Assembly (NCBI RefSeq): GCF_006345805.1
Contig: NC_043012.1
Location: forward strand, 6,634,001 to 6,698,000
Direction of reading: 5' to 3'
DNA: 64,000 bases
Origin: Octopus sinensis
Lineage: Eukaryota
Numbering within the stretch: position 1 is the first letter of the stretch; the number at the start of each line of letters is the position of its first letter. The notes beneath the pieces were generated by a model. The model did no database searches. It had not been told where the DNA came from and saw nothing but the letters and a program-made list of their open reading frames with translations. The translations under genes and the position numbers were made by a program. Positions 1-55,881 of the stretch are shown piece by piece.

Positions 1-1868
1 AGATAAGCCCCTGTACCTGGCTTTTGTTGACATGGAGAAAGCCTTCGACAGGGTCCCCCGATCCCTTATCTGGTGGGCAATGAGGAAACTAGGGATAGAT
101 GAATGGTTAGTGAGAGCTGTGCGGGCCATGTACAGGGACGCCGCTAGTAGGGTGAGGGTTGGAAATGTGTACAGTGAAGAATTCCGGGTAGAGGTAGGAG
201 TCCACCAAGGCTCAGTACTCAGCCCCCTCCTATTTATCATAGTCCTCCAGGCAATAACGGAGGAATTCAAGACAGGATGCCCTTGGGAGCTCCTCTATGC
301 TGATGACCTTGCTCTAATTGCTGAGTCACTATCAGAACTGGAGGAGAAGTTTCAGGTGTGGAAACAAGGATTAGAATCGAAGGGCCTCAGAGTCAATCTA
401 GCTAAAACCAAAGTTGTAATCAGTAGGAAGGTAGACAAATCACAAACACCTTCAGGTAGATGGCCCTGCTCGATCTGTAGAAAAGGTGTAGGTAGAAACT
501 CTATAAGATGCACCAAGTGTAAGCTATGGACACATAAGAGATGCAGCAATGTCAAAGGAAGGCTAACTAGGAAGATGGTTTTTGTATGTGGCAGATGCTC
601 AGGAACAATAAACACTGAAAATGCTCTGAGACCAACTTCCGTCACTTTCCAGGGAGAAAAACTAGAAATAGTTGATAGTTTCCGTTACCTAGGTGACCAA
701 GTCAGCAGCGGGGGCGGGTGTGCTGAAAGTGTAACTGCTAGAGTAAGAATAGCTTGGGCAAAGTTCAGAGAGCTCTTACCTCTGCTGGTGACAAAAGGCC
801 TCTCGCACAGAGTGAAAGGCAGACTGTATGATGCGTGTGTACGAACAGCCATGCTACATGGCAGTGAAACATGGGCCGTGACTGCTGAGGATATGCGTAA
901 GCTCGCTAGAAATGAAGCCAGTATGCTCCGATGGATGTGTAATGCCGGTACTCACACTCGGCAGAGTGTAAGTACCTTGAGAGAAAAGCTGGACCTAAGA
1001 AGCATCAGTTGTGGTGTGCAAGAGAGACGTTTGCGCTGGTATGGTCATGTGGTGAGAATGGATGAAGATAGTTGTGTGAAAAAGTGCCACACCCTAGCGG
1101 TTGAGGGAACCTGTGGAAGAGGCAGACCCAGGAAAACCTGGGACGAGGTGGTGAAGCACGACCTTCGAACTTTAGGTCTCACTGAGGAAATGACTAGAGA
1201 CCGAGACCTCTGGAAGTGTGCTGTGCGCGAGAAGACCGGCAGGACAAGTGAGTCCATAACCCGTGGCCTTCTACATGGGATGGAGCCAGCCTACGTATGC
1301 ATACCTTCCCTTCTTGGGACACAAAACTCTACTTGTGAAGACGTGATGAGGTAAGTGAGGATCAGAATCGAAATTGATCAATGGAAATTGCGGATGTGCT
1401 ACCAGTGCCAGTGGCATGTCAAAACTCTGCTTGTGAAGACCCGTTGAGGCAAGTGACGATCAGAATCGAAATCGATCAATGGAAATCGATCAATGGAAAT
1501 TGCAGATGTGTTACCAGTGCCGGTGGCATGTAAGAGAACTTTCCGTTTCGCGACCGTTGCCAGCACCGCCCCGTTTTGTGTCCGTTGCCAGCCTCGCCTG
1601 GCCCTCGTGCCGGTGGCACATAAAAAGCACCATCCGTTCGTGGCCGTTTGCCAGCTCTGTCTGGCACCAGTGCGGGTGGCACGTAAAAAGCACCCACTAC
1701 ACTCACGGAGTGGTTGGCGTTAGGAAGGGCATCCAGCCGTAGAAACACTGCCAGATTTGACTGGGCCTGATGAAGCCTTCTGGCTTCACAGACCCCAGTA
1801 GAACCGTCCAACCCATGCTAGCATGGAAAACGGACGCTAAACGATGATGATGATGATGATGATGATGA
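1..1868 (+). mobile_element. RTE-clade non-LTR retrotransposon, 3' part (RT, C-terminal domain, modular 3' UTR, (GAT)n tail); continues beyond window start
   Basis: ORF 32-1354 has RT motifs QGSVLSPLLF and YADDL and RTE-type C-terminal motifs RLRWYGHV and GRGRPRKTW. The 3' end matches the tail shared by many copies in the window and ends in (GAT)n at about 1843-1868. Confidence 0.95.
32..1354 (+). CDS. Reverse transcriptase (partial ORF of RTE LINE) with PHD-like C4HC3 finger; C-terminus extended by a 1-nt frameshift relative to the 24 kb copy
   Basis: Frame is open from the window start (DKPLYLAFVDMEKAFD). The sister copy ends EKTRQDK*, whereas this one reads EKTGRTSES... Confidence 0.9.
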   Translation: MEKAFDRVPRSLIWWAMRKLGIDEWLVRAVRAMYRDAASRVRVGNVYSEEFRVEVGVHQGSVLSPLLFIIVLQAITEEFKTGCPWELLYADDLALIAESLSELEEKFQVWKQGLESKGLRVNLAKTKVVISRKVDKSQTPSGRWPCSICRKGVGRNSIRCTKCKLWTHKRCSNVKGRLTRKMVFVCGRCSGTINTENALRPTSVTFQGEKLEIVDSFRYLGDQVSSGGGCAESVTARVRIAWAKFRELLPLLVTKGLSHRVKGRLYDACVRTAMLHGSETWAVTAEDMRKLARNEASMLRWMCNAGTHTRQSVSTLREKLDLRSISCGVQERRLRWYGHVVRMDEDSCVKKCHTLAVEGTCGRGRPRKTWDEVVKHDLRTLGLTEEMTRDRDLWKCAVREKTGRTSESITRGLLHGMEPAYVCIPSLLGTQNSTCEDVMR

Positions 1869-1913
1869 TATATATATATATATATATACATACACATACA
1901 CACACAGACACAG

Positions 1914-5146: not shown

Positions 5147-5533
5147 ACAGAAAAAACAAGGAGAGAAAAAATGTGTGCAGTGGGTAACAATCTATCATGG
5201 CAACTAGTGCCGGACAGAATATATATATTTATATATATATCTATATATATATATATATATATATTATGCAGGTGGCACGTAATATGCACCATTTGAGTGT
5301 GGCTGATGCCAGTGCTGCCTGACTGACAACCATGCTGGTGGCACATAAAAAGCACTCACCACACTCTCAAAGTGGTTTGCATTAGGAAGGGCATCCAGTT
5401 GTAGAAACCTTGCCAGATCAGACTAGAGCCTGGTGCAGCCCCCTGGTGTACCAGTTCTTAGTCAAACCATTCAATCCATGCCAGCATGGAAAACGGACGC
5501 TAAACGATGATGATAATGATATATATATATCAT

Positions 5534-5601
<68 letters not shown>

Positions 5602-11317: not shown

Positions 11318-11636
11318 GTGAAGGTGCATGGCTCAGTGGTTAGAGCAATGGGCTAACAATCATGAGGTAGTGAGTTCAAATCCTGGACTGGGCTGTGAGT
11401 TGTGTTCTTGAGCAAGTCATTTTTATTTTGCATTGCTTCAGTTCACTCAGCTGTAGAAATGAGTTGTGACGTCACTGGTGCCAGCCTGTATCGGCCTTTG
11501 CCTTTCTCTTGGACAACATCAGTGGTGTGGAGAGGGGAGACTGGTATACATGGTTGACTGCTGGTCTCCCATAAACAATCTTGCCTGGACTTTCTAGGTG
11601 CAATCCCATGGTCACTTATGACCGAAGGCAGTCTTT
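11318..11636 (+). mobile_element. SINE family C with a CORE-like domain; other copies at 22924-23268 (-, TCAAATGT flank duplication) and 55030-55337 (-, different 3' half)
   Basis: tRNA head followed by GTTGTGTTCTTGAGCAAG...CTCAGCTGTAGAAATGAG, resembling the CORE-SINE domain. Confidence 0.75.
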
Positions 11637-12545
11637 ATATATTGTATATAACAAGATGTGCTTATGCTTACCCAGGAACCTAAAATGGGGAATCCCTGGA
11701 ATGCATATACATTTGTGTGTATACATAACAGTGTATAATTCTATCTCTGTCATCATGGAAAGGATGAATGATGATGAAAATAGAATTCTACACATCGATG
11801 TGTACACACAAATGTACACTCGTACATTTCAGGGATTCTCTATTACAGGTTCCTGGGTGAATGTTTGCACACAGCCCCACATACATAGGGAATACAAATA
11901 CATACACACACATAAACAGTAATGAAACATACTTGTGTGTTATTGTGACACACACACACAGGAGTGCAAGTTTATTCACATACACGCACACATATTTGTG
12001 GCACTCTGTCGGTTACGATGATGAGGGTTCCAGTTGATCTGATCAACGAAACAGCCTGCTCGTGAGATTAACATGCAAGTGGCTGAGCACTCCACAGGCA
12101 TGTGTACCCTTAACGTAGTTCTCAGGGAGATTCAACATGACACAGAGTATGACAAGGCTGATCCTTTGAAATGTAGGTACAACAGAAGCAGGAAGAAAGA
12201 GTGAGAGGAAAATGTGGTGAAAGAGTACAGCAGGGTTCACCACCACCCCCTGCCAGGTGTTTTCACTCAATAAACACTCACAACACCTGGTCTGGGAATC
12301 GAAACTGTGATTCTATGACCTTGAGTTTGCTGCCCTAACCACTGGGCCATTGTGCCTCCACACACATACATGCATATATCAACCAATTTCTGTAACTGTA
12401 AACCCAAACCCAAAGAATTTTCTTTACTCAACCCTTTAACAATGAAATTAAATTCCTTGCTTATTCAAATAACGATGTTAAATATCGTTCCCAAAAATAG
12501 AATATGTATTTTCTGCAAGTTACATTACCTTAATAAAGTTGACAT

Positions 12546-12836
12546 ATCATCAACATCATTTAACCTCTGTTTTCCATGCTGGCATGGATGGGTTAGGGTT
12601 AGGGTAAGGGTTTGATAGAAGCTGGTAAGCCTGGGAGCCATATCAGGCTCTGTTGTCTGCTCTGGCATGATTTCTACAGCTGGGTGCACTTCCTCAAGCA
12701 AACCACTTTACACAGTGTACCAGGTACTTTTTATATGGCACCAGAACTAGTGCTTTGTGTGTGATCCAGCGCCAGTGCATTTTATGCAACACAACCATTG
12801 GTGCCTTTTACATGGTGCCAACACCAACAAAGTCAC
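12546..12836 (-). mobile_element. RTE 3' UTR and tail fused directly downstream of the U6 copy
   Basis: Degenerate GGCAC.TAAAAAGCAC modules, the shared RTE tail and a (GAT)-like end at 12546-12560. Confidence 0.8.
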
Positions 12837-12941
12837 AAAAATATGGAATGCTTCACAAATTTTTCTGTCATCCTTATGCAGGGGCGATGCTAATCTTCTT
12901 GGTATCATTCCAGTTTTAATATATGTATTGCTGAAATAGTT
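12837..12941 (-). pseudogene. U6: Full-length U6 snRNA retro-pseudogene
   Basis: The reverse complement reads ...TTCAGCAATACATATATTAAAACTGGAATGATACCAAGAAGATTAGCATCGCCCCTGCATAAGGATGACAGAAAAATTTGTGAAGCATTCCATATTTTT, colinear with U6. Many mismatches are CpG transitions. Confidence 0.92.
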
Positions 12942-14841
12942 ATAAACATGACATTCCTGAACAAAAGAGGGACTGGTTTACAAAAATGCTTTTTGCAGTT
13001 TGACTAAACATTTCAAAGTGGTACTCCAGCATGGCCACAGTCTAATGACAGAAACAAGTAAATGAAGAACGAAAATATTCTTTTCTGCTCTAGGCACAAG
13101 GCCTGAAATGTTTTAGGGAGTGGGAGGGGCCAGTCGATTAGATTGACCCCAGTATGCAACAGGCACTTAATTTACTGACCCTGAAAGGATGAAAGGCAAA
13201 GTCGTCAACCTTGGTTTGAACTCAGAATGTAAAGGCAGACAAAATATGGCTAAGCATTTAACCCTGTATGCTAATGTTTCTGCCAGCTTGCTGTCTTGAA
13301 GAACAAAAAAATATTGGCACCAACATAAATAAATTACTATTATTTTTTGAGCATCTGAAATTTAGAAAGTTCCGTATTAATCTAAGAACCTGTCAAGAGA
13401 ACATCCACCAGCTTGATCTTATAACTGAATTTACATTCCCACAAATCCTCTCCTCTTATTATAATTCCATTCAGATTTAGGGTTTATTAAAGGAGTATAA
13501 ATCAATCCCTTTATTTATATTCCTATAATATTTCATTGCCAGATGTTCCGTGGAGAGGGTCAGGATCTGAAGACAAAGTCTTAATTGATTCTTCGTTTTA
13601 TTCTTTTCTACTCTAGGCAAAAGGCCTGAAATCTTTCGGGGGAAGGGGCCAGTTGATTAGATTGACCCCTAGTATGCAACTGGTACTTAATTTATTGACC
13701 CTGAAAGGATGAAAGGCAAAGTAGACCTCAGCGGAATTTGAATTCAGAATGTAAAGACAGACGAAATACCTATTTCTTTATTACTCACAAGGGGCTAAAC
13801 ATAGAGAGGACAAACAAGGACAGACAAACGGATTAAGTTGATTATATCGACCCCCAGTGCATAATTGGTACTTATTTAATCGACCCCAAAAAGATGAAAG
13901 GCAAAGTTGACCTTGGTGGAATTTGAACTCAGAACGTAGCGGCAGATGAAATACCGCTAAGCATTTCACCCGGCGTGCTAATGTTTCTGCCAGCTTGCCG
14001 CCTTTGTTTGTTTTATTGACTTGGGAAGTATGGAAAGCGAAGTTGATCTTGTCAGGATTTGAATTCGGAATGTAAAGAGCAGAAACCAAATACAGGAAGG
14101 CATTTTGTTTAACTTTCTAACAATTCTGTTGAATTGAATTATTTCGCTCTGAAACAATTGTTGTCAACAAGCATCCATTGTTGATCCTAGGAAGTGAATT
14201 TAATACAAAATGCACTCATCTTAGACAAATATCAGTTAGTTACAAAACAATGAAAATATGTACATCTTGAATCAAAATATAAATTCACCTGTATTGTTAA
14301 CATTGTTATTTATGAACGTGTAACACCAGCAGCTCTCCTGTATTTAAGATTTCAATAAAATTTCTGAATAAACAAATTTTAACCAGCTACCCTTCAATAC
14401 ATAACTGTTGCCCTCACAATTGACTCTAATTACAACAACACCCACAACAAAAATGACGAAATTTCATAAAAACAGTCTCTGCTTCAATCAAATAAAATAA
14501 ACCTTTTTTTTACAAAAAGAAGCAACAAGTACAAATAACTTTCTAATAATCTTTTGGACGGAATCGGTGAAGCTCCATTACTTATGAAAGACTTTGTGAC
14601 CACAATTGATAAGAAACAAATAAAGGTGATGTTGACAATGGTTTTGAAATATAGAAATTGAATATTTGCAATATAAAGAAGCAAACTTTTAGCAAATAAA
14701 TTCTTGTGTGTAGACACAATTGATGTTGAAATCATGGTGTAGGAATATGAGAGTTAATGAACCAGCTAAGAACAGCTTGTCGTGCTCATAAATACATCAT
14801 CATCATCATCATCATCATCATCGTCGTCGTTGTTGTCGTCG

Positions 14842-16416: not shown

Positions 16417-17067
16417 ATGCCTTGTAAGAAAAACTTACAACCAAAAGCCTTACCATACATCTCCACACACAACCCTCTCAATAACGAAGCCTTCGGCAAC
16501 ATCCTCCACAACATACCCCTCCTAAAAAAAGACCACAGAATGAACACAATCCTCCAAACACACACGATCATAAAAAGCAAAAGACAGCCTAGATCCATGA
16601 AAAGTCTCCTAACACAAGCCCGAAGTCACTCTTCAACACAGAAGCCGACAGTAAAAAAATGTGGAAGACCCAATTGCGGGATATGCGACTATCTAATTGA
16701 GGGATCAGAGTTCTCCTTCAAACAGGGACAACGGTTTACAGTGAAAAGCAACTTCACATATGCTTCGGAGAACCTAATATACTCACTAACCTGCTCCGGG
16801 TGTCAAGAGCAGTACATAGGCCAAACAAAAAATGGTTTGCGTAAACGAATGGCCCTGCACAGATCCCAGATAAAAATTCCCCAAAACAGAAAAATAGCTT
16901 TTAGCCAACACATAGATACTTGCGCCAACAAAAAAACACCAAACTTCAGGATTTTCCCCCTCTACCAATTTAGGGACGATACAACCTCGAGACAACGAAT
17001 AAGTAAAGAAAATCTCTTTATTACAAAATACAGGCCACTTCTTAACGGGTCTACAACAAACAATTAA
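16417..17067 (+). CDS. Penelope GIY-YIG endonuclease with the end of the RT thumb/linker; RT core missing
   Basis: Contains C-x4-C-x2-C, NLIY...CSGC...YIGQT, the conserved R (LRKR), H, E (KENLFI) and terminal N (PLLN) of PLE endonucleases. Confidence 0.88.
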   Translation: MPCKKNLQPKALPYISTHNPLNNEAFGNILHNIPLLKKDHRMNTILQTHTIIKSKRQPRSMKSLLTQARSHSSTQKPTVKKCGRPNCGICDYLIEGSEFSFKQGQRFTVKSNFTYASENLIYSLTCSGCQEQYIGQTKNGLRKRMALHRSQIKIPQNRKIAFSQHIDTCANKKTPNFRIFPLYQFRDDTTSRQRISKENLFITKYRPLLNGSTTNN

Positions 17068-36794: not shown

Positions 36795-36832
<38 letters not shown>

Positions 36833-40964: not shown

Positions 40965-41500
40965 ATATATATATATATATATATATATGACAAAAATATT
41001 ATATTATTCATATCATCATATATATATATAATATATATGATGATATGAATATATATAATATTTTTGTCATATATATATATATATGATATATATATATAAT
41101 ATATTTTTGTTATATATATATATATATACACACACACACTTACACACACACACATATTTGTAGGGAGAGAGACTACAATACATAGAGCACTATAAAGTAA
41201 CCAATTTTGTGTTGATTAAATGACGAAATTTCAGCAAAGAAAGCATAAAATATTGTTAATCCTGCTGTGTATTAATATCAGAAATATCTGATTTATTTTT
41301 GTCGCTGTTGTTGTTGTTGTTGTTGTTATTTTCAATTTCATTATTTTGGTTGGCAGAATATCATACAGCTATATTTATGGAAAACACAAACATCCATCCA
41401 TAGCTGTATACATACATAGATACATAACCACATTCATATACATGGATTCACATAGATATATGGATAAATATATACATATAAATATGTTTGTGTGTGTGTG

Positions 41501-55031: not shown

Positions 55032-55827
55032 TATATATAAAATGGACTCTCCCGTCATTAGACGACATATGAGGGTTTGACAATTTCTTATCAAACAACC
55101 ACACAGACGATTTGTTTATAGTGACCAAACATTTGTGTAGATGTCAGCTCACTCCCTCCATCAAATCAACATTACCTGTACAGGTACAACTGGATGCCAA
55201 ATGTCAGATGCTGAAATGATTGCAGAGAAATGTGAAATGAAGTGCTTTGCTCAAGAACACAACGCAAAGCCTGGAGTGGGAATCGAACCCACGATCTCAC
55301 AATTGTGAGTGCAACACTTTAACCACTAAGCCATGCTATATATCATCATCATCATCATCATCGTTTAACTCCGTTTTACATGCTGGCATGGGTTGGACAG
55401 TTCAACTGGGGTCTGGGAAGCCAGGAGGCTGCATCAGGCCCCAATCTGATTTGGCAGTGTTTCTATAGCTGTATGCCCTTCCTGATACCAACCACTCTGT
55501 GAGTGTAGTGGGTGCTTTTTATGTGCCACCAGCACAGGGGGCCAGAGGAGGCTGGCATCGCTCACGATCGGATGGTGCTTTTTACGTGCCACCAGCACAC
55601 ACACACACACATATATATATAGAGAGAGTAATATCATCATTATCATTTAATGTCCATCTTCTATGCTGGCATGGGTTGGATGGTTTGACTGGAACAGGTA
55701 AGGTTGAGGGATGCACCAGGTTCCATTATCTTCTCCAGCAAGGTTTCTACAGCAGGATTCTCTTCCTAACATCAACCATTCAAAAGAGTGTACTGGGTAC
55801 TTTTTATGTGGCAACAGCCCAAAAGCT

Positions 55828-55881
<54 letters not shown>

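What the first reader, a model, noticed from the sequence alone, without database searches (positions are those of the whole stretch)
12533..12954. Full-length U6 snRNA / RTE LINE chimeric retrocopy
Seen on the minus strand: an apparently full-length U6 (12941 to 12837, 5' end degenerate) ending in five T, joined directly to an RTE 3' UTR, tail and (GAT)-like end. It is flanked by degenerate direct repeats ATAAAGTTGACAT (12533-45) and ATAAACATGACAT (12942-54). Established: U6/LINE chimeras with this layout are known from vertebrates, chiefly with L1. Inference: RTE machinery in a mollusc produced the same product; I am not aware that this has been described in cephalopods.
Basis: partly seen in the sequence, partly recalled or inferred. 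Interest (0 to 1): 0.7.

Follow-up and report, generated by a model that had tools for sequence, protein, structure and literature searches.

The report
Dead U6 copy fused to LINE tail
An old, decayed copy of the U6 spliceosomal RNA sits fused head-to-tail to the 3' end of an RTE-type jumping gene in an octopus genome, most likely pasted in as one piece; such by-products of retrotransposition are already known from vertebrates, so this is a new host rather than a new phenomenon.

Summary
On the minus strand, 12943/12941..12837 is a full-length U6 (Rfam 87.1 bits, model 1-105/105) ending in exactly five T. It is joined without a spacer to 291 bp (12836..12546) that are the 5'-truncated 3' UTR, terminal hairpin and (GAT)n-like tail of the window's most abundant LINE family. 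One 13-bp direct repeat (11/13) brackets the whole unit. Repeats around U6 alone (7/13) or the LINE part alone (8/13) are at background. There is no TATA box at -30, the ACAGAGA box is mutated, and both halves have lost all their CpGs.

The partner LINE is octopus-borne (83-86% identity to O. bimaculoides and O. vulgaris proteins). It has an RTE-type build: an AP endonuclease followed by the RT in about 3 kb, no gag-like ORF1, and a microsatellite tail. Its RT phylogeny was not tested.

The best reading is a single chimeric retrocopy, dead on arrival. Doucet et al. 2015 already described U6 chimeras with L1, L2 and RTE-like LINEs in a lizard and called the process general. I found no report from molluscs. 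The orthologous empty site could not be reached with these tools.

The parts
12942..12954 (-). 5' target-site duplication ATGTCATGTTTAT. Its last 2 nt (AT) could instead be U6 positions 1-2.
   Evidence: 11/13 match to 12545..12533; anchored P 0.002-0.011
12837..12941 (-). Full-length U6 snRNA retrocopy (pseudogene). ACAGAGA is changed to ACCAAGA, the 5' stem-loop is degraded, and all 7 yardstick CpGs are lost.
   Evidence: Rfam U6 87.1 bits, model 1-105/105; gapless 107-nt alignment with 23 mismatches, 18 transitions
12837..12841 (-). U6 3'-terminal run of five T, forming the junction with the LINE part. There is no spacer and no microhomology.
   Evidence: Sequence. Matches the 5-7 T reported for genomic U6/L1 chimeras (PMC6789731).
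12546..12836 (-). 5'-truncated 3' UTR of the RTE-type LINE family. It starts inside the UTR's GGTGGCACGTAAAAAGCACC-type sub-repeats and runs to the authentic 3' terminus.
   Evidence: Alignments with RT-linked copies: 24.6% divergent from the tail consensus, 0/8 CpG kept
12574..12587 (-). Inner 3' hairpin CCATGC-CA-GCATGG of the LINE terminus, the presumed RT recognition element. It is intact in the chimera.
   Evidence: 93% of cells paired across 20 copies against 41% or less in slid controls. The distant L003 element has CCTC-AGTA-GAGG at the same position, and both fold into the same two-helix structure.
12546..12560 (-). Microsatellite-like tail AATGATGTTGATGAT, a decayed (GAT)n
   Evidence: Family copies end in TAAACGAT(GAT)n
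12533..12545 (-). 3' target-site duplication ATGTCAACTTTAT
12963..12966 (-). TTTT run at positions -12 to -9 from the first TSD base, at the place where RTE-mobilised elements show a T-stretch
   Evidence: Sequence; signature described in PMC6007223. Single locus: by my own rough estimate, not computed, about 5% expected by chance.
2..1869 (+). Reference copy of the partner LINE family: C-terminal RT with an inserted PHD-type finger (ORF to 1354), then a ~500-bp 3' UTR with sub-repeats, the terminal hairpin and the (GAT)n tail
   Evidence: Pfam RVT_1 6.6e-19; sequence; 83-86% identity to O. bimaculoides and O. vulgaris proteins

Best explanation
This is a single-event chimeric retrocopy. In the germ line of an octopus ancestor, a mature U6 snRNA ending in five U became joined to a 5'-truncated RNA of an RTE-type LINE. 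The joining happened in one of two ways. Either the LINE reverse transcriptase switched template from the broken 5' end of the LINE RNA to the 3' end of U6 during target-primed reverse transcription, or an RtcB-type RNA ligase joined U6 (2',3'-cyclic phosphate end) to a 5'-OH LINE fragment beforehand. The LINE enzyme recognised its own 3' hairpin and (GAT)n tail, nicked the target about 10 nt downstream of a T-stretch, and copied the LINE 3' UTR and then all of U6. This produced a 13-bp target-site duplication. The copy has no U6 promoter and was dead on arrival, and it has since decayed by roughly 15-25%. Shown here: the anatomy, the single TSD, the lack of a TATA box, the decay, and the LINE family's identity and RTE-type build. 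Inferred: that it was one event, which enzyme did it, and how the two RNAs were joined. The two joining routes cannot be told apart from one locus.
For: Full-length U6 ends in T5 and is fused directly to a LINE 3' UTR that reaches the family's true terminus. One TSD of 11/13 brackets the whole unit (P 0.002-0.011), while U6-only (7/13) and LINE-only (8/13) repeats are near the null mean of 6.6. There is no TATA at -24 to -32, and from about -55 upward the flank is an unrelated repeat with about 12 other matches. Both halves have lost all CpGs (0/7 and 0/8) and are similarly diverged (21.5% and 24.6%), which fits one insertion date. The layout equals that of published genomic U6/L1 chimeras: full-length U6, 5-7 T, variably 5'-truncated LINE, 6-19 bp TSD (PMC6789731). 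U6 chimeras with RTE-like and L2 LINEs are also published (PMC4476161). Partner LINE: an Exo_endo_phos ORF lies directly upstream of the RT-PHD ORF in the relative L003, whose ORF ends in (GAT)n with no ORF1. The APE's named relatives are 'craniofacial development protein 2-like'. A T-stretch sits at P-12 to P-9. The conserved 3' hairpin is retained in the chimera, consistent with the 'stringent' recognition of a LINE's own 3' end that Doucet et al. invoke for L2 and RTE clades.
Against: There is only one locus and no empty orthologous site, so arrival of both parts together is inferred from the TSD alone. The TSD is imperfect and only moderately significant (an unanchored null gives P 0.044). 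The LINE part is only 67-75% identical to the other window copies, and its first ~75 nt match the UTR sub-repeats only loosely, so the exact source subfamily was not found. The RTE clade assignment lacks an RT phylogeny, and octopus copies in the window and in L001 are 5'-truncated, so the APE was seen only in a 50%-identical relative.
Confidence: 0.8

Rival explanations
1. There were two independent insertions that happen to abut. A 5'-truncated LINE copy inserted first, and a U6 retrocopy later landed exactly at its 5' edge, or the reverse order.
For: The window is saturated with 5'-truncated tails of this LINE family (17-18 other matches within about 85 kb examined), so adjacency by chance is not absurd. 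The whole-element TSD is imperfect.
Against: There is no TSD around U6 alone (7/13) or the LINE part alone (8/13), both at background. The junction is base-precise between the natural U6 3' end (T5) and the LINE sequence, in the same orientation. A bare U6 cDNA without a poly(A) or LINE tail has no known way to be integrated by a LINE that requires its own 3' end (established knowledge, as cited).
Confidence: 0.08
2. This is one copy of a propagating composite family: a U6-headed SINE-like element with an RTE tail, or a DNA-level duplicate of such a unit. It would then not be a one-off chimera.
For: The 2026 O. vulgaris repeat annotation lists SINE classes 'U' (19 recent insertions) and 'U-L1' (PMC13282606), so repeat families classified as having snRNA-derived heads are annotated in octopus. 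RTE chimeras with small RNAs are said to give rise to SINEs.
Against: The T5 run lies between the head and the tail and is a Pol III terminator. A U6-initiated Pol III transcript would therefore end before the LINE tail it needs for mobilisation (established knowledge applied to the sequence). Metazoan U6 promoters are external, so a retrocopy does not carry them. There is no second U6 in the window or in 45 kb of fetched loci. Copy number in the genome could not be measured.
Confidence: 0.09
3. This is a functional or variant U6 gene that happens to lie next to a LINE fragment.
For: The Rfam score is well above threshold and the length is full.
Against: The catalytic ACAGAGA box reads ACCAAGA. 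Rfam flags non-canonical pairs and a 2-nt gap in the 5' stem-loop. There are 23 of 107 differences with all CpGs decayed. There is no TATA at -30.
Confidence: 0.01

Closest known systems
U6/LINE-1 chimeric pseudogenes of mammals (Buzdin 2002; Garcia-Perez 2007; Doucet 2015; Moldovan 2019)
   Same: Full-length sense U6 ending in about 5 T, fused directly to a variably 5'-truncated LINE 3' end, with one TSD of 6-19 bp around the whole unit and no promoter.
   Different: The partner is not L1. The tail is a (GAT)n microsatellite with a 3' hairpin rather than poly(A). The target is not an L1 TT/AAAA-type site but shows a T-stretch about 10 nt upstream. The host is a mollusc.
[quoted passage not shown] 2015, PMC4476161)
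   Same: U6 fused to the 3' end of a 'stringent' non-L1 LINE. Those authors conclude that such clades make only chimeras, never U6-poly(A) copies.
   Different: Those are vertebrate hosts, only three RTE-like cases were reported, and the LINE family differs. Here the RTE-type LINE has a PHD-finger insertion in its RT.
Chimeric retrogenes of the MGL LINE in Magnaporthe grisea (PMC2104539)
   Same: A cellular non-coding RNA is fused 5' to a LINE 3' end, which shows that this kind of chimera formation also occurs outside vertebrates (abstract).
   Different: The 5' partner named in the abstract is a highly expressed non-coding RNA of unknown function. The host is a fungus and the LINE clade differs.
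SINEU (snRNA-headed SINEs, Kojima 2015, PMC4494074)
   Same: An snRNA-derived 5' part is joined to a LINE-related 3' part.
   Different: SINEU heads are U1 or U2, the families propagate, and they are argued not to be sums of independent chimeras. Here a T5 terminator separates head and tail, and only one copy is seen.

Membership tests
U6/LINE chimeric retrocopy | Full-length or near full-length U6 in sense orientation at the 5' end | tested here: met
   Rfam model 1-105/105 at 87.1 bits; gapless 107-nt alignment
U6/LINE chimeric retrocopy | U6 ends in a short T run (about 4-8) fused directly to a 5'-truncated LINE in the same orientation | tested here: met
   T5 at 12841..12837, then LINE 3' UTR from 12836; literature range
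U6/LINE chimeric retrocopy | The LINE part reaches the LINE's authentic 3' terminus and tail | tested here: met
   Terminal hairpin, AAAACAGAGGTTAAATGAT and a GAT-like tail align with 19 other termini
U6/LINE chimeric retrocopy | One TSD flanks the composite, and none flanks either part | tested here: met
   11/13 for the whole unit (P 0.002-0.011) against 7/13 and 8/13 for the parts
U6/LINE chimeric retrocopy | No U6 promoter (TATA at about -30, PSE at about -55) | tested here: met
   Positions -32 to -24 read CAGTCCCTC, so there is no TATA. From about -55 upward the flank is an unrelated repeat. No mollusc PSE consensus was on hand, so the PSE was not scored directly.
U6/LINE chimeric retrocopy | Both parts are absent together from an orthologous empty site | not testable with these tools
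   No cephalopod DNA collection can be searched by DNA. Exact and homology look-ups of flank ORFs found nothing.
RTE clade of non-LTR retrotransposons (partner LINE) | Single ORF of about 1000 aa with an N-terminal AP endonuclease and an RT, without a gag-like ORF1, restriction-like endonuclease or RNase H | tested here: met
   L003 has a 297-aa Exo_endo_phos ORF 31 nt upstream of the 687-aa RT-PHD ORF, with nothing gag-like upstream. This was seen in a relative with 50% RT identity. The octopus copies examined are 5'-truncated.
RTE clade of non-LTR retrotransposons (partner LINE) | Microsatellite-like 3' tail instead of poly(A) | tested here: met
   (GAT)n in all family copies and in L003. 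L003 has a short 3' UTR, but the octopus copies have a ~500-bp UTR with sub-repeats.
RTE clade of non-LTR retrotransposons (partner LINE) | RT phylogeny places the element inside the RTE clade | not testable with these tools
   No reference RT set was available. Database names are uninformative for the RT. The APE's named relatives are 'craniofacial development protein 2-like'; that this name marks BovB/RTE-derived ORFs is my own recollection and was not confirmed in the literature.
RTE clade of non-LTR retrotransposons (partner LINE) | T-stretch near position -10 of the 5' TSD (Nishiyama and Ohshima 2018) | tested here: inconclusive
   The chimera has TTTT at -12 to -9. TSDs of other copies could not be recovered because the tails run into (AT)n.
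snRNA-headed SINE family | Many copies share one head-body junction | tested here: inconclusive
   There is one copy in 64 kb and none in 45 kb of other loci. The metagenome junction scan gave only chance matches. The octopus genome could not be searched.
snRNA-headed SINE family | Transcription from the head can run through to the LINE-derived tail | tested here: not met
   A T5 run, which is a Pol III terminator, lies between U6 and the LINE part
Functional U6 snRNA gene | Intact catalytic ACAGAGA box and 5' stem-loop, and an upstream TATA | tested here: not met
   ACCAAGA; non-canonical pairs and a gap in the 5' stem; no TATA

The most novel reading that the evidence does not exclude
U6/RTE chimeras may be a recurrent class in cephalopod genomes. 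That would make this the first documented protostome example and would show that the U6-to-LINE joining step (template switching or RtcB-type ligation) operates with RTE-type enzymes across Bilateria. Dated U6 chimeras could then serve as markers of RTE activity through octopus evolution, as Doucet et al. used them for L1 in mammals.
Probability: 0.45. Interest if true: 0.4.

Novelty: new member of a known kind. Interest (0 to 1): 0.3.

Why it matters
It extends a known by-product of LINE retrotransposition (U6 fused to a LINE 3' end) to a mollusc and to an RTE-type LINE that depends on a 3' hairpin and a microsatellite tail. That supports the published view that this chimera formation is a general property of non-LTR retrotransposons. 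RTE LINEs are claimed to be active in the octopus brain, so such chimeras could be used as dated footprints of RTE activity. The copy itself is a decayed pseudogene with no sign of function.

Tried and rejected
(1) SINE donor idea. Copy 55836..55631 shares small indels with the chimera and has a tRNA-like sequence upstream. However, that head belongs to a different repeat family whose copies lie elsewhere, and ARAGORN finds no tRNA. The tails are therefore plain 5'-truncated LINE ends.

(2) Reaching the same or an orthologous locus. Ten small ORFs around the element and the 216-aa GIY-YIG ORF 3.5 kb away are not in the protein collection. A full HMMER search with the 87-aa flank-spanning ORF found one weak low-complexity hit. 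I therefore did not spend the third homology search.

(3) Junction scan of metagenome contigs with TTCCATATTTTTGTGAC. All 128 matches were chance occurrences, none preceded by a full U6 (one has a 30-nt partial similarity) and none followed by the LINE tail. The result is uninformative.

(4) TSDs and the T-stretch signature for other family copies could not be recovered, because most tails abut (AT)n.

(5) Clade naming from the literature. Two searches for 'craniofacial development protein 2' did not document its RTE origin.

(6) Looking for the APE upstream of the O. vulgaris copy in L001 showed only repeat debris, so that copy is 5'-truncated.

(7) The permissive Rfam scan of 11500-14000 added only microsatellite-driven miRNA look-alikes.

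(8) R4/Dong was considered as the partner because it is abundant in O. vulgaris. It was rejected because the lineage has an N-terminal AP endonuclease.

Full report
OBSERVATION

Rfam places one U6 snRNA in the window, on the minus strand at 12939..12837. It scores 87.1 bits against a gathering score of 44 and covers model positions 1-105 of 105. All seven yardstick CpGs are destroyed, and the ACAGAGA box reads ACCAAGA. The copy is therefore full length, with a 2-nt ambiguity at its 5' edge, and it is a pseudogene.

The U6 ends in exactly five T (12841..12837) and continues without any spacer into GTGACTTTGTTGG....

The next 291 bp (12836..12546) align with the 3' UTR ends of the window's LINE copies, right up to the terminus ...CCATGCCAGCATGGAAAACAGAGGTTAAATGATGTTGATGAT. 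The last ~200 bp match 17-18 other places in the window and in the fetched O. vulgaris locus.

If repeats must abut the element ends within 3 nt, P is 0.011 against equally spaced random window sites and 0.0017 against shuffled flanks. Without anchoring, P is only 0.044.

WHAT THE 3' PART IS

The window begins inside a LINE copy. Its ORF (2..1354) has an RVT_1 domain (E 6.6e-19) and a PHD-type finger. It is followed by a ~500-bp 3' UTR made of GGTGGCACGTAAAAAGCACC-containing sub-repeats, and it ends ...CCATGCTAGCATGGAAAACGGACGCTAAACGAT(GAT)n at about 1869. The chimera's 3' part starts inside such a sub-repeat and is colinear from there to the terminus.

Many other copies are truncated in the same region. 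A suspected tRNA-like head next to one copy belongs to another repeat family. The donor was therefore LINE RNA, not a SINE of the kind seen in this window.

The chimera's LINE part is 24.6% diverged from a consensus of 19 tails and has kept none of 8 consensus CpGs. Some of that divergence must be subfamily difference, because its source subfamily is not represented in the window.

WHICH LINE

The RT protein's closest named relatives are O. bimaculoides (83%) and O. vulgaris (86%) proteins, which identifies the host genus. At 50-58% identity the same RT-PHD build occurs in Hydractinia, Branchiostoma and Mercenaria.

Octopus copies in the window and in an O. vulgaris chromosome segment (L001) are 5'-truncated. 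A 50%-identical relative on a 2.8-Mb contig (L003) shows the full build. A 297-aa Exo_endo_phos ORF lies 31 nt upstream of the 687-aa RT-PHD ORF, nothing gag-like precedes it, and the ORF ends directly in ...AACGGACTATAAAACGGATAT(GAT)n.

That excludes the R2/R4/Dong type and matches the RTE type: an AP endonuclease plus an RT in about 3 kb with a microsatellite tail. Petrosino et al. likewise note microsatellites as an RTE feature in octopus.

The endonuclease's only informative database names are 'craniofacial development protein 2-like'. From memory that name marks BovB/RTE-derived ORFs, but I could not document this. I therefore call the partner 'RTE-type' with good but not complete support.

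CIS SIGNAL

The last ~60 nt are conserved at DNA level between the octopus copies and L003. Both fold into an outer GUCC/GGAC helix enclosing a hairpin. The hairpin is CCAUGC-YA-GCAUGG in octopus and CCUC-AGUA-GAGG in L003.

Across 20 termini the inner stem is 93% paired, against 41% or less when the partner columns are slid. One copy carries a double-sided change. Covariation within octopus is weak, so this is suggestive evidence only.

The chimera retains the inner hairpin (12587..12574). This is what one expects if the enzyme recognises its own 3' end, the 'stringent' mode that Doucet et al. invoke for L2 and RTE clades. It also explains why U6 could be carried along only as a chimera.

ONE EVENT OR TWO

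- A TSD around U6 alone scores 7/13 and around the LINE part alone 8/13. The null mean of the best score is 6.6.
- There is no TATA box at -24 to -32 (CAGTCCCTC). From about -55 upward the flank is an unrelated repeat with about 12 other matches.
- Both halves have lost every CpG and are similarly diverged.
- A TTTT run lies at -12 to -9 from the first TSD base. This is where RTE-mobilised elements show a T-stretch (PMC6007223). By my own rough estimate (not computed), that would occur by chance in about 5% of sites.
- The 'GATGAT|AT' 3' junction is typical of the family.

Together these favour one integration by the LINE's own machinery. I give this a confidence of 0.8.

HOW THE TWO RNAS WERE JOINED

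Two published routes fit equally well: template switching during reverse transcription, and RtcB ligation of U6 ending in a 2',3'-cyclic phosphate to a 5'-OH LINE fragment. The five-T end equals the mature human U6 end and falls within the 5-7 T of genomic U6/L1 chimeras. There are no untemplated bases and no microhomology at the junction. One locus cannot decide between the routes.

RIVALS

- **Independent abutting insertions (0.08).** Disfavoured by the TSD pattern and the base-precise junction.
- **A propagating U6-headed composite family (0.09).** It cannot be excluded without a genome-wide count, and O. vulgaris annotations do list SINE/U classes. However, the T5 run would stop Pol III before the tail, and the U6 promoter is external.
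- **A functional U6 gene (0.01).** Excluded by the mutated catalytic box and the missing TATA.

COMPARISON AND NOVELTY

The layout is that of mammalian U6/L1 chimeras. Doucet et al. 2015 already reported three U6 chimeras each with L1-like, L2-like and RTE-like (RTEX-2) LINEs in Anolis, and L2 chimeras in platypus. They concluded that the process is general for non-LTR retrotransposons.

My searches of the held library found no report from molluscs or other invertebrate animals. That absence is limited to that library. This is therefore a new member of a known kind, with modest interest (0.3).

WHAT COULD NOT BE DONE

The orthologous empty-site test and a genome-wide census of U6 chimeras could not be run. 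No cephalopod DNA collection is searchable by DNA here, and protein handles failed. The metagenome junction scan returned only chance matches.

Noticed in passing
window 32-1354 (+), residues 146-189 of the ORF; also P0002-P0120: The partner LINE's RT carries a C4HC3 PHD-type finger inserted between RT motifs, after GLRVNLAKTK and before LEIVDSFRYLG. The same RT-PHD build occurs at 50-58% identity in Hydractinia, Branchiostoma and Mercenaria, so it marks a widespread marine-invertebrate LINE lineage.
   Followed up: partly
window 1809-1869 and about 15 other termini; L003 6997-7077: The last ~60 nt of the LINE (GTCAAACCGTCCAACCC, hairpin, GGAAAACGGACGTTAAACGAT(GAT)n) are conserved at DNA level between the octopus copies and a relative with only 50% RT identity, where the stretch is coding. 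Both fold into the same two-helix structure with a compensated inner stem.
   Followed up: partly
window 12590-12610 (-): There is a telomere-like run CCCTTACCCTAACCCTAACCC (TTAGGG-type on the plus strand) inserted in the chimera's LINE part, relative to all other copies.
   Followed up: no
window, e.g. 1870-1890, 5521-5540, 36797-36830, 40965-40990: Most tails of this LINE family run straight from (GAT)n into (AT)n microsatellites. Either the element targets AT repeats or it seeds them.
   Followed up: no
window 16417-17067 (+): A 216-aa ORF with a GIY-YIG nuclease domain (E 5.5e-05), probably the endonuclease end of a Penelope-like element.
   Followed up: no
window 55275-55334 (-): A tRNA-like match just above Rfam threshold (31.8 bits) lies directly after a LINE tail and is not called by ARAGORN. 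It is probably the head of a tRNA-derived SINE.
   Followed up: no
P0003 (UniRef, Octopus bimaculoides, 653 aa): This database protein combines the LINE RT-PHD region with a LETM1-like RBD domain. It is probably a gene model that has swallowed a LINE fragment.
   Followed up: no
P0050, P0071, P0121: LINE proteins of this lineage are deposited under bacterial MAG names (Herbaspirillum sp. at 73% identity to the octopus RT; Candidatus Thiodiazotropha). This looks like animal-host DNA contaminating metagenome-assembled genomes.
   Followed up: no
window 11705-11818: Sub-threshold miRNA-family matches (mir-5014, mir-466, mir-297) occur on both strands of one short stretch, which looks like a repeat-driven artefact.
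   Followed up: no
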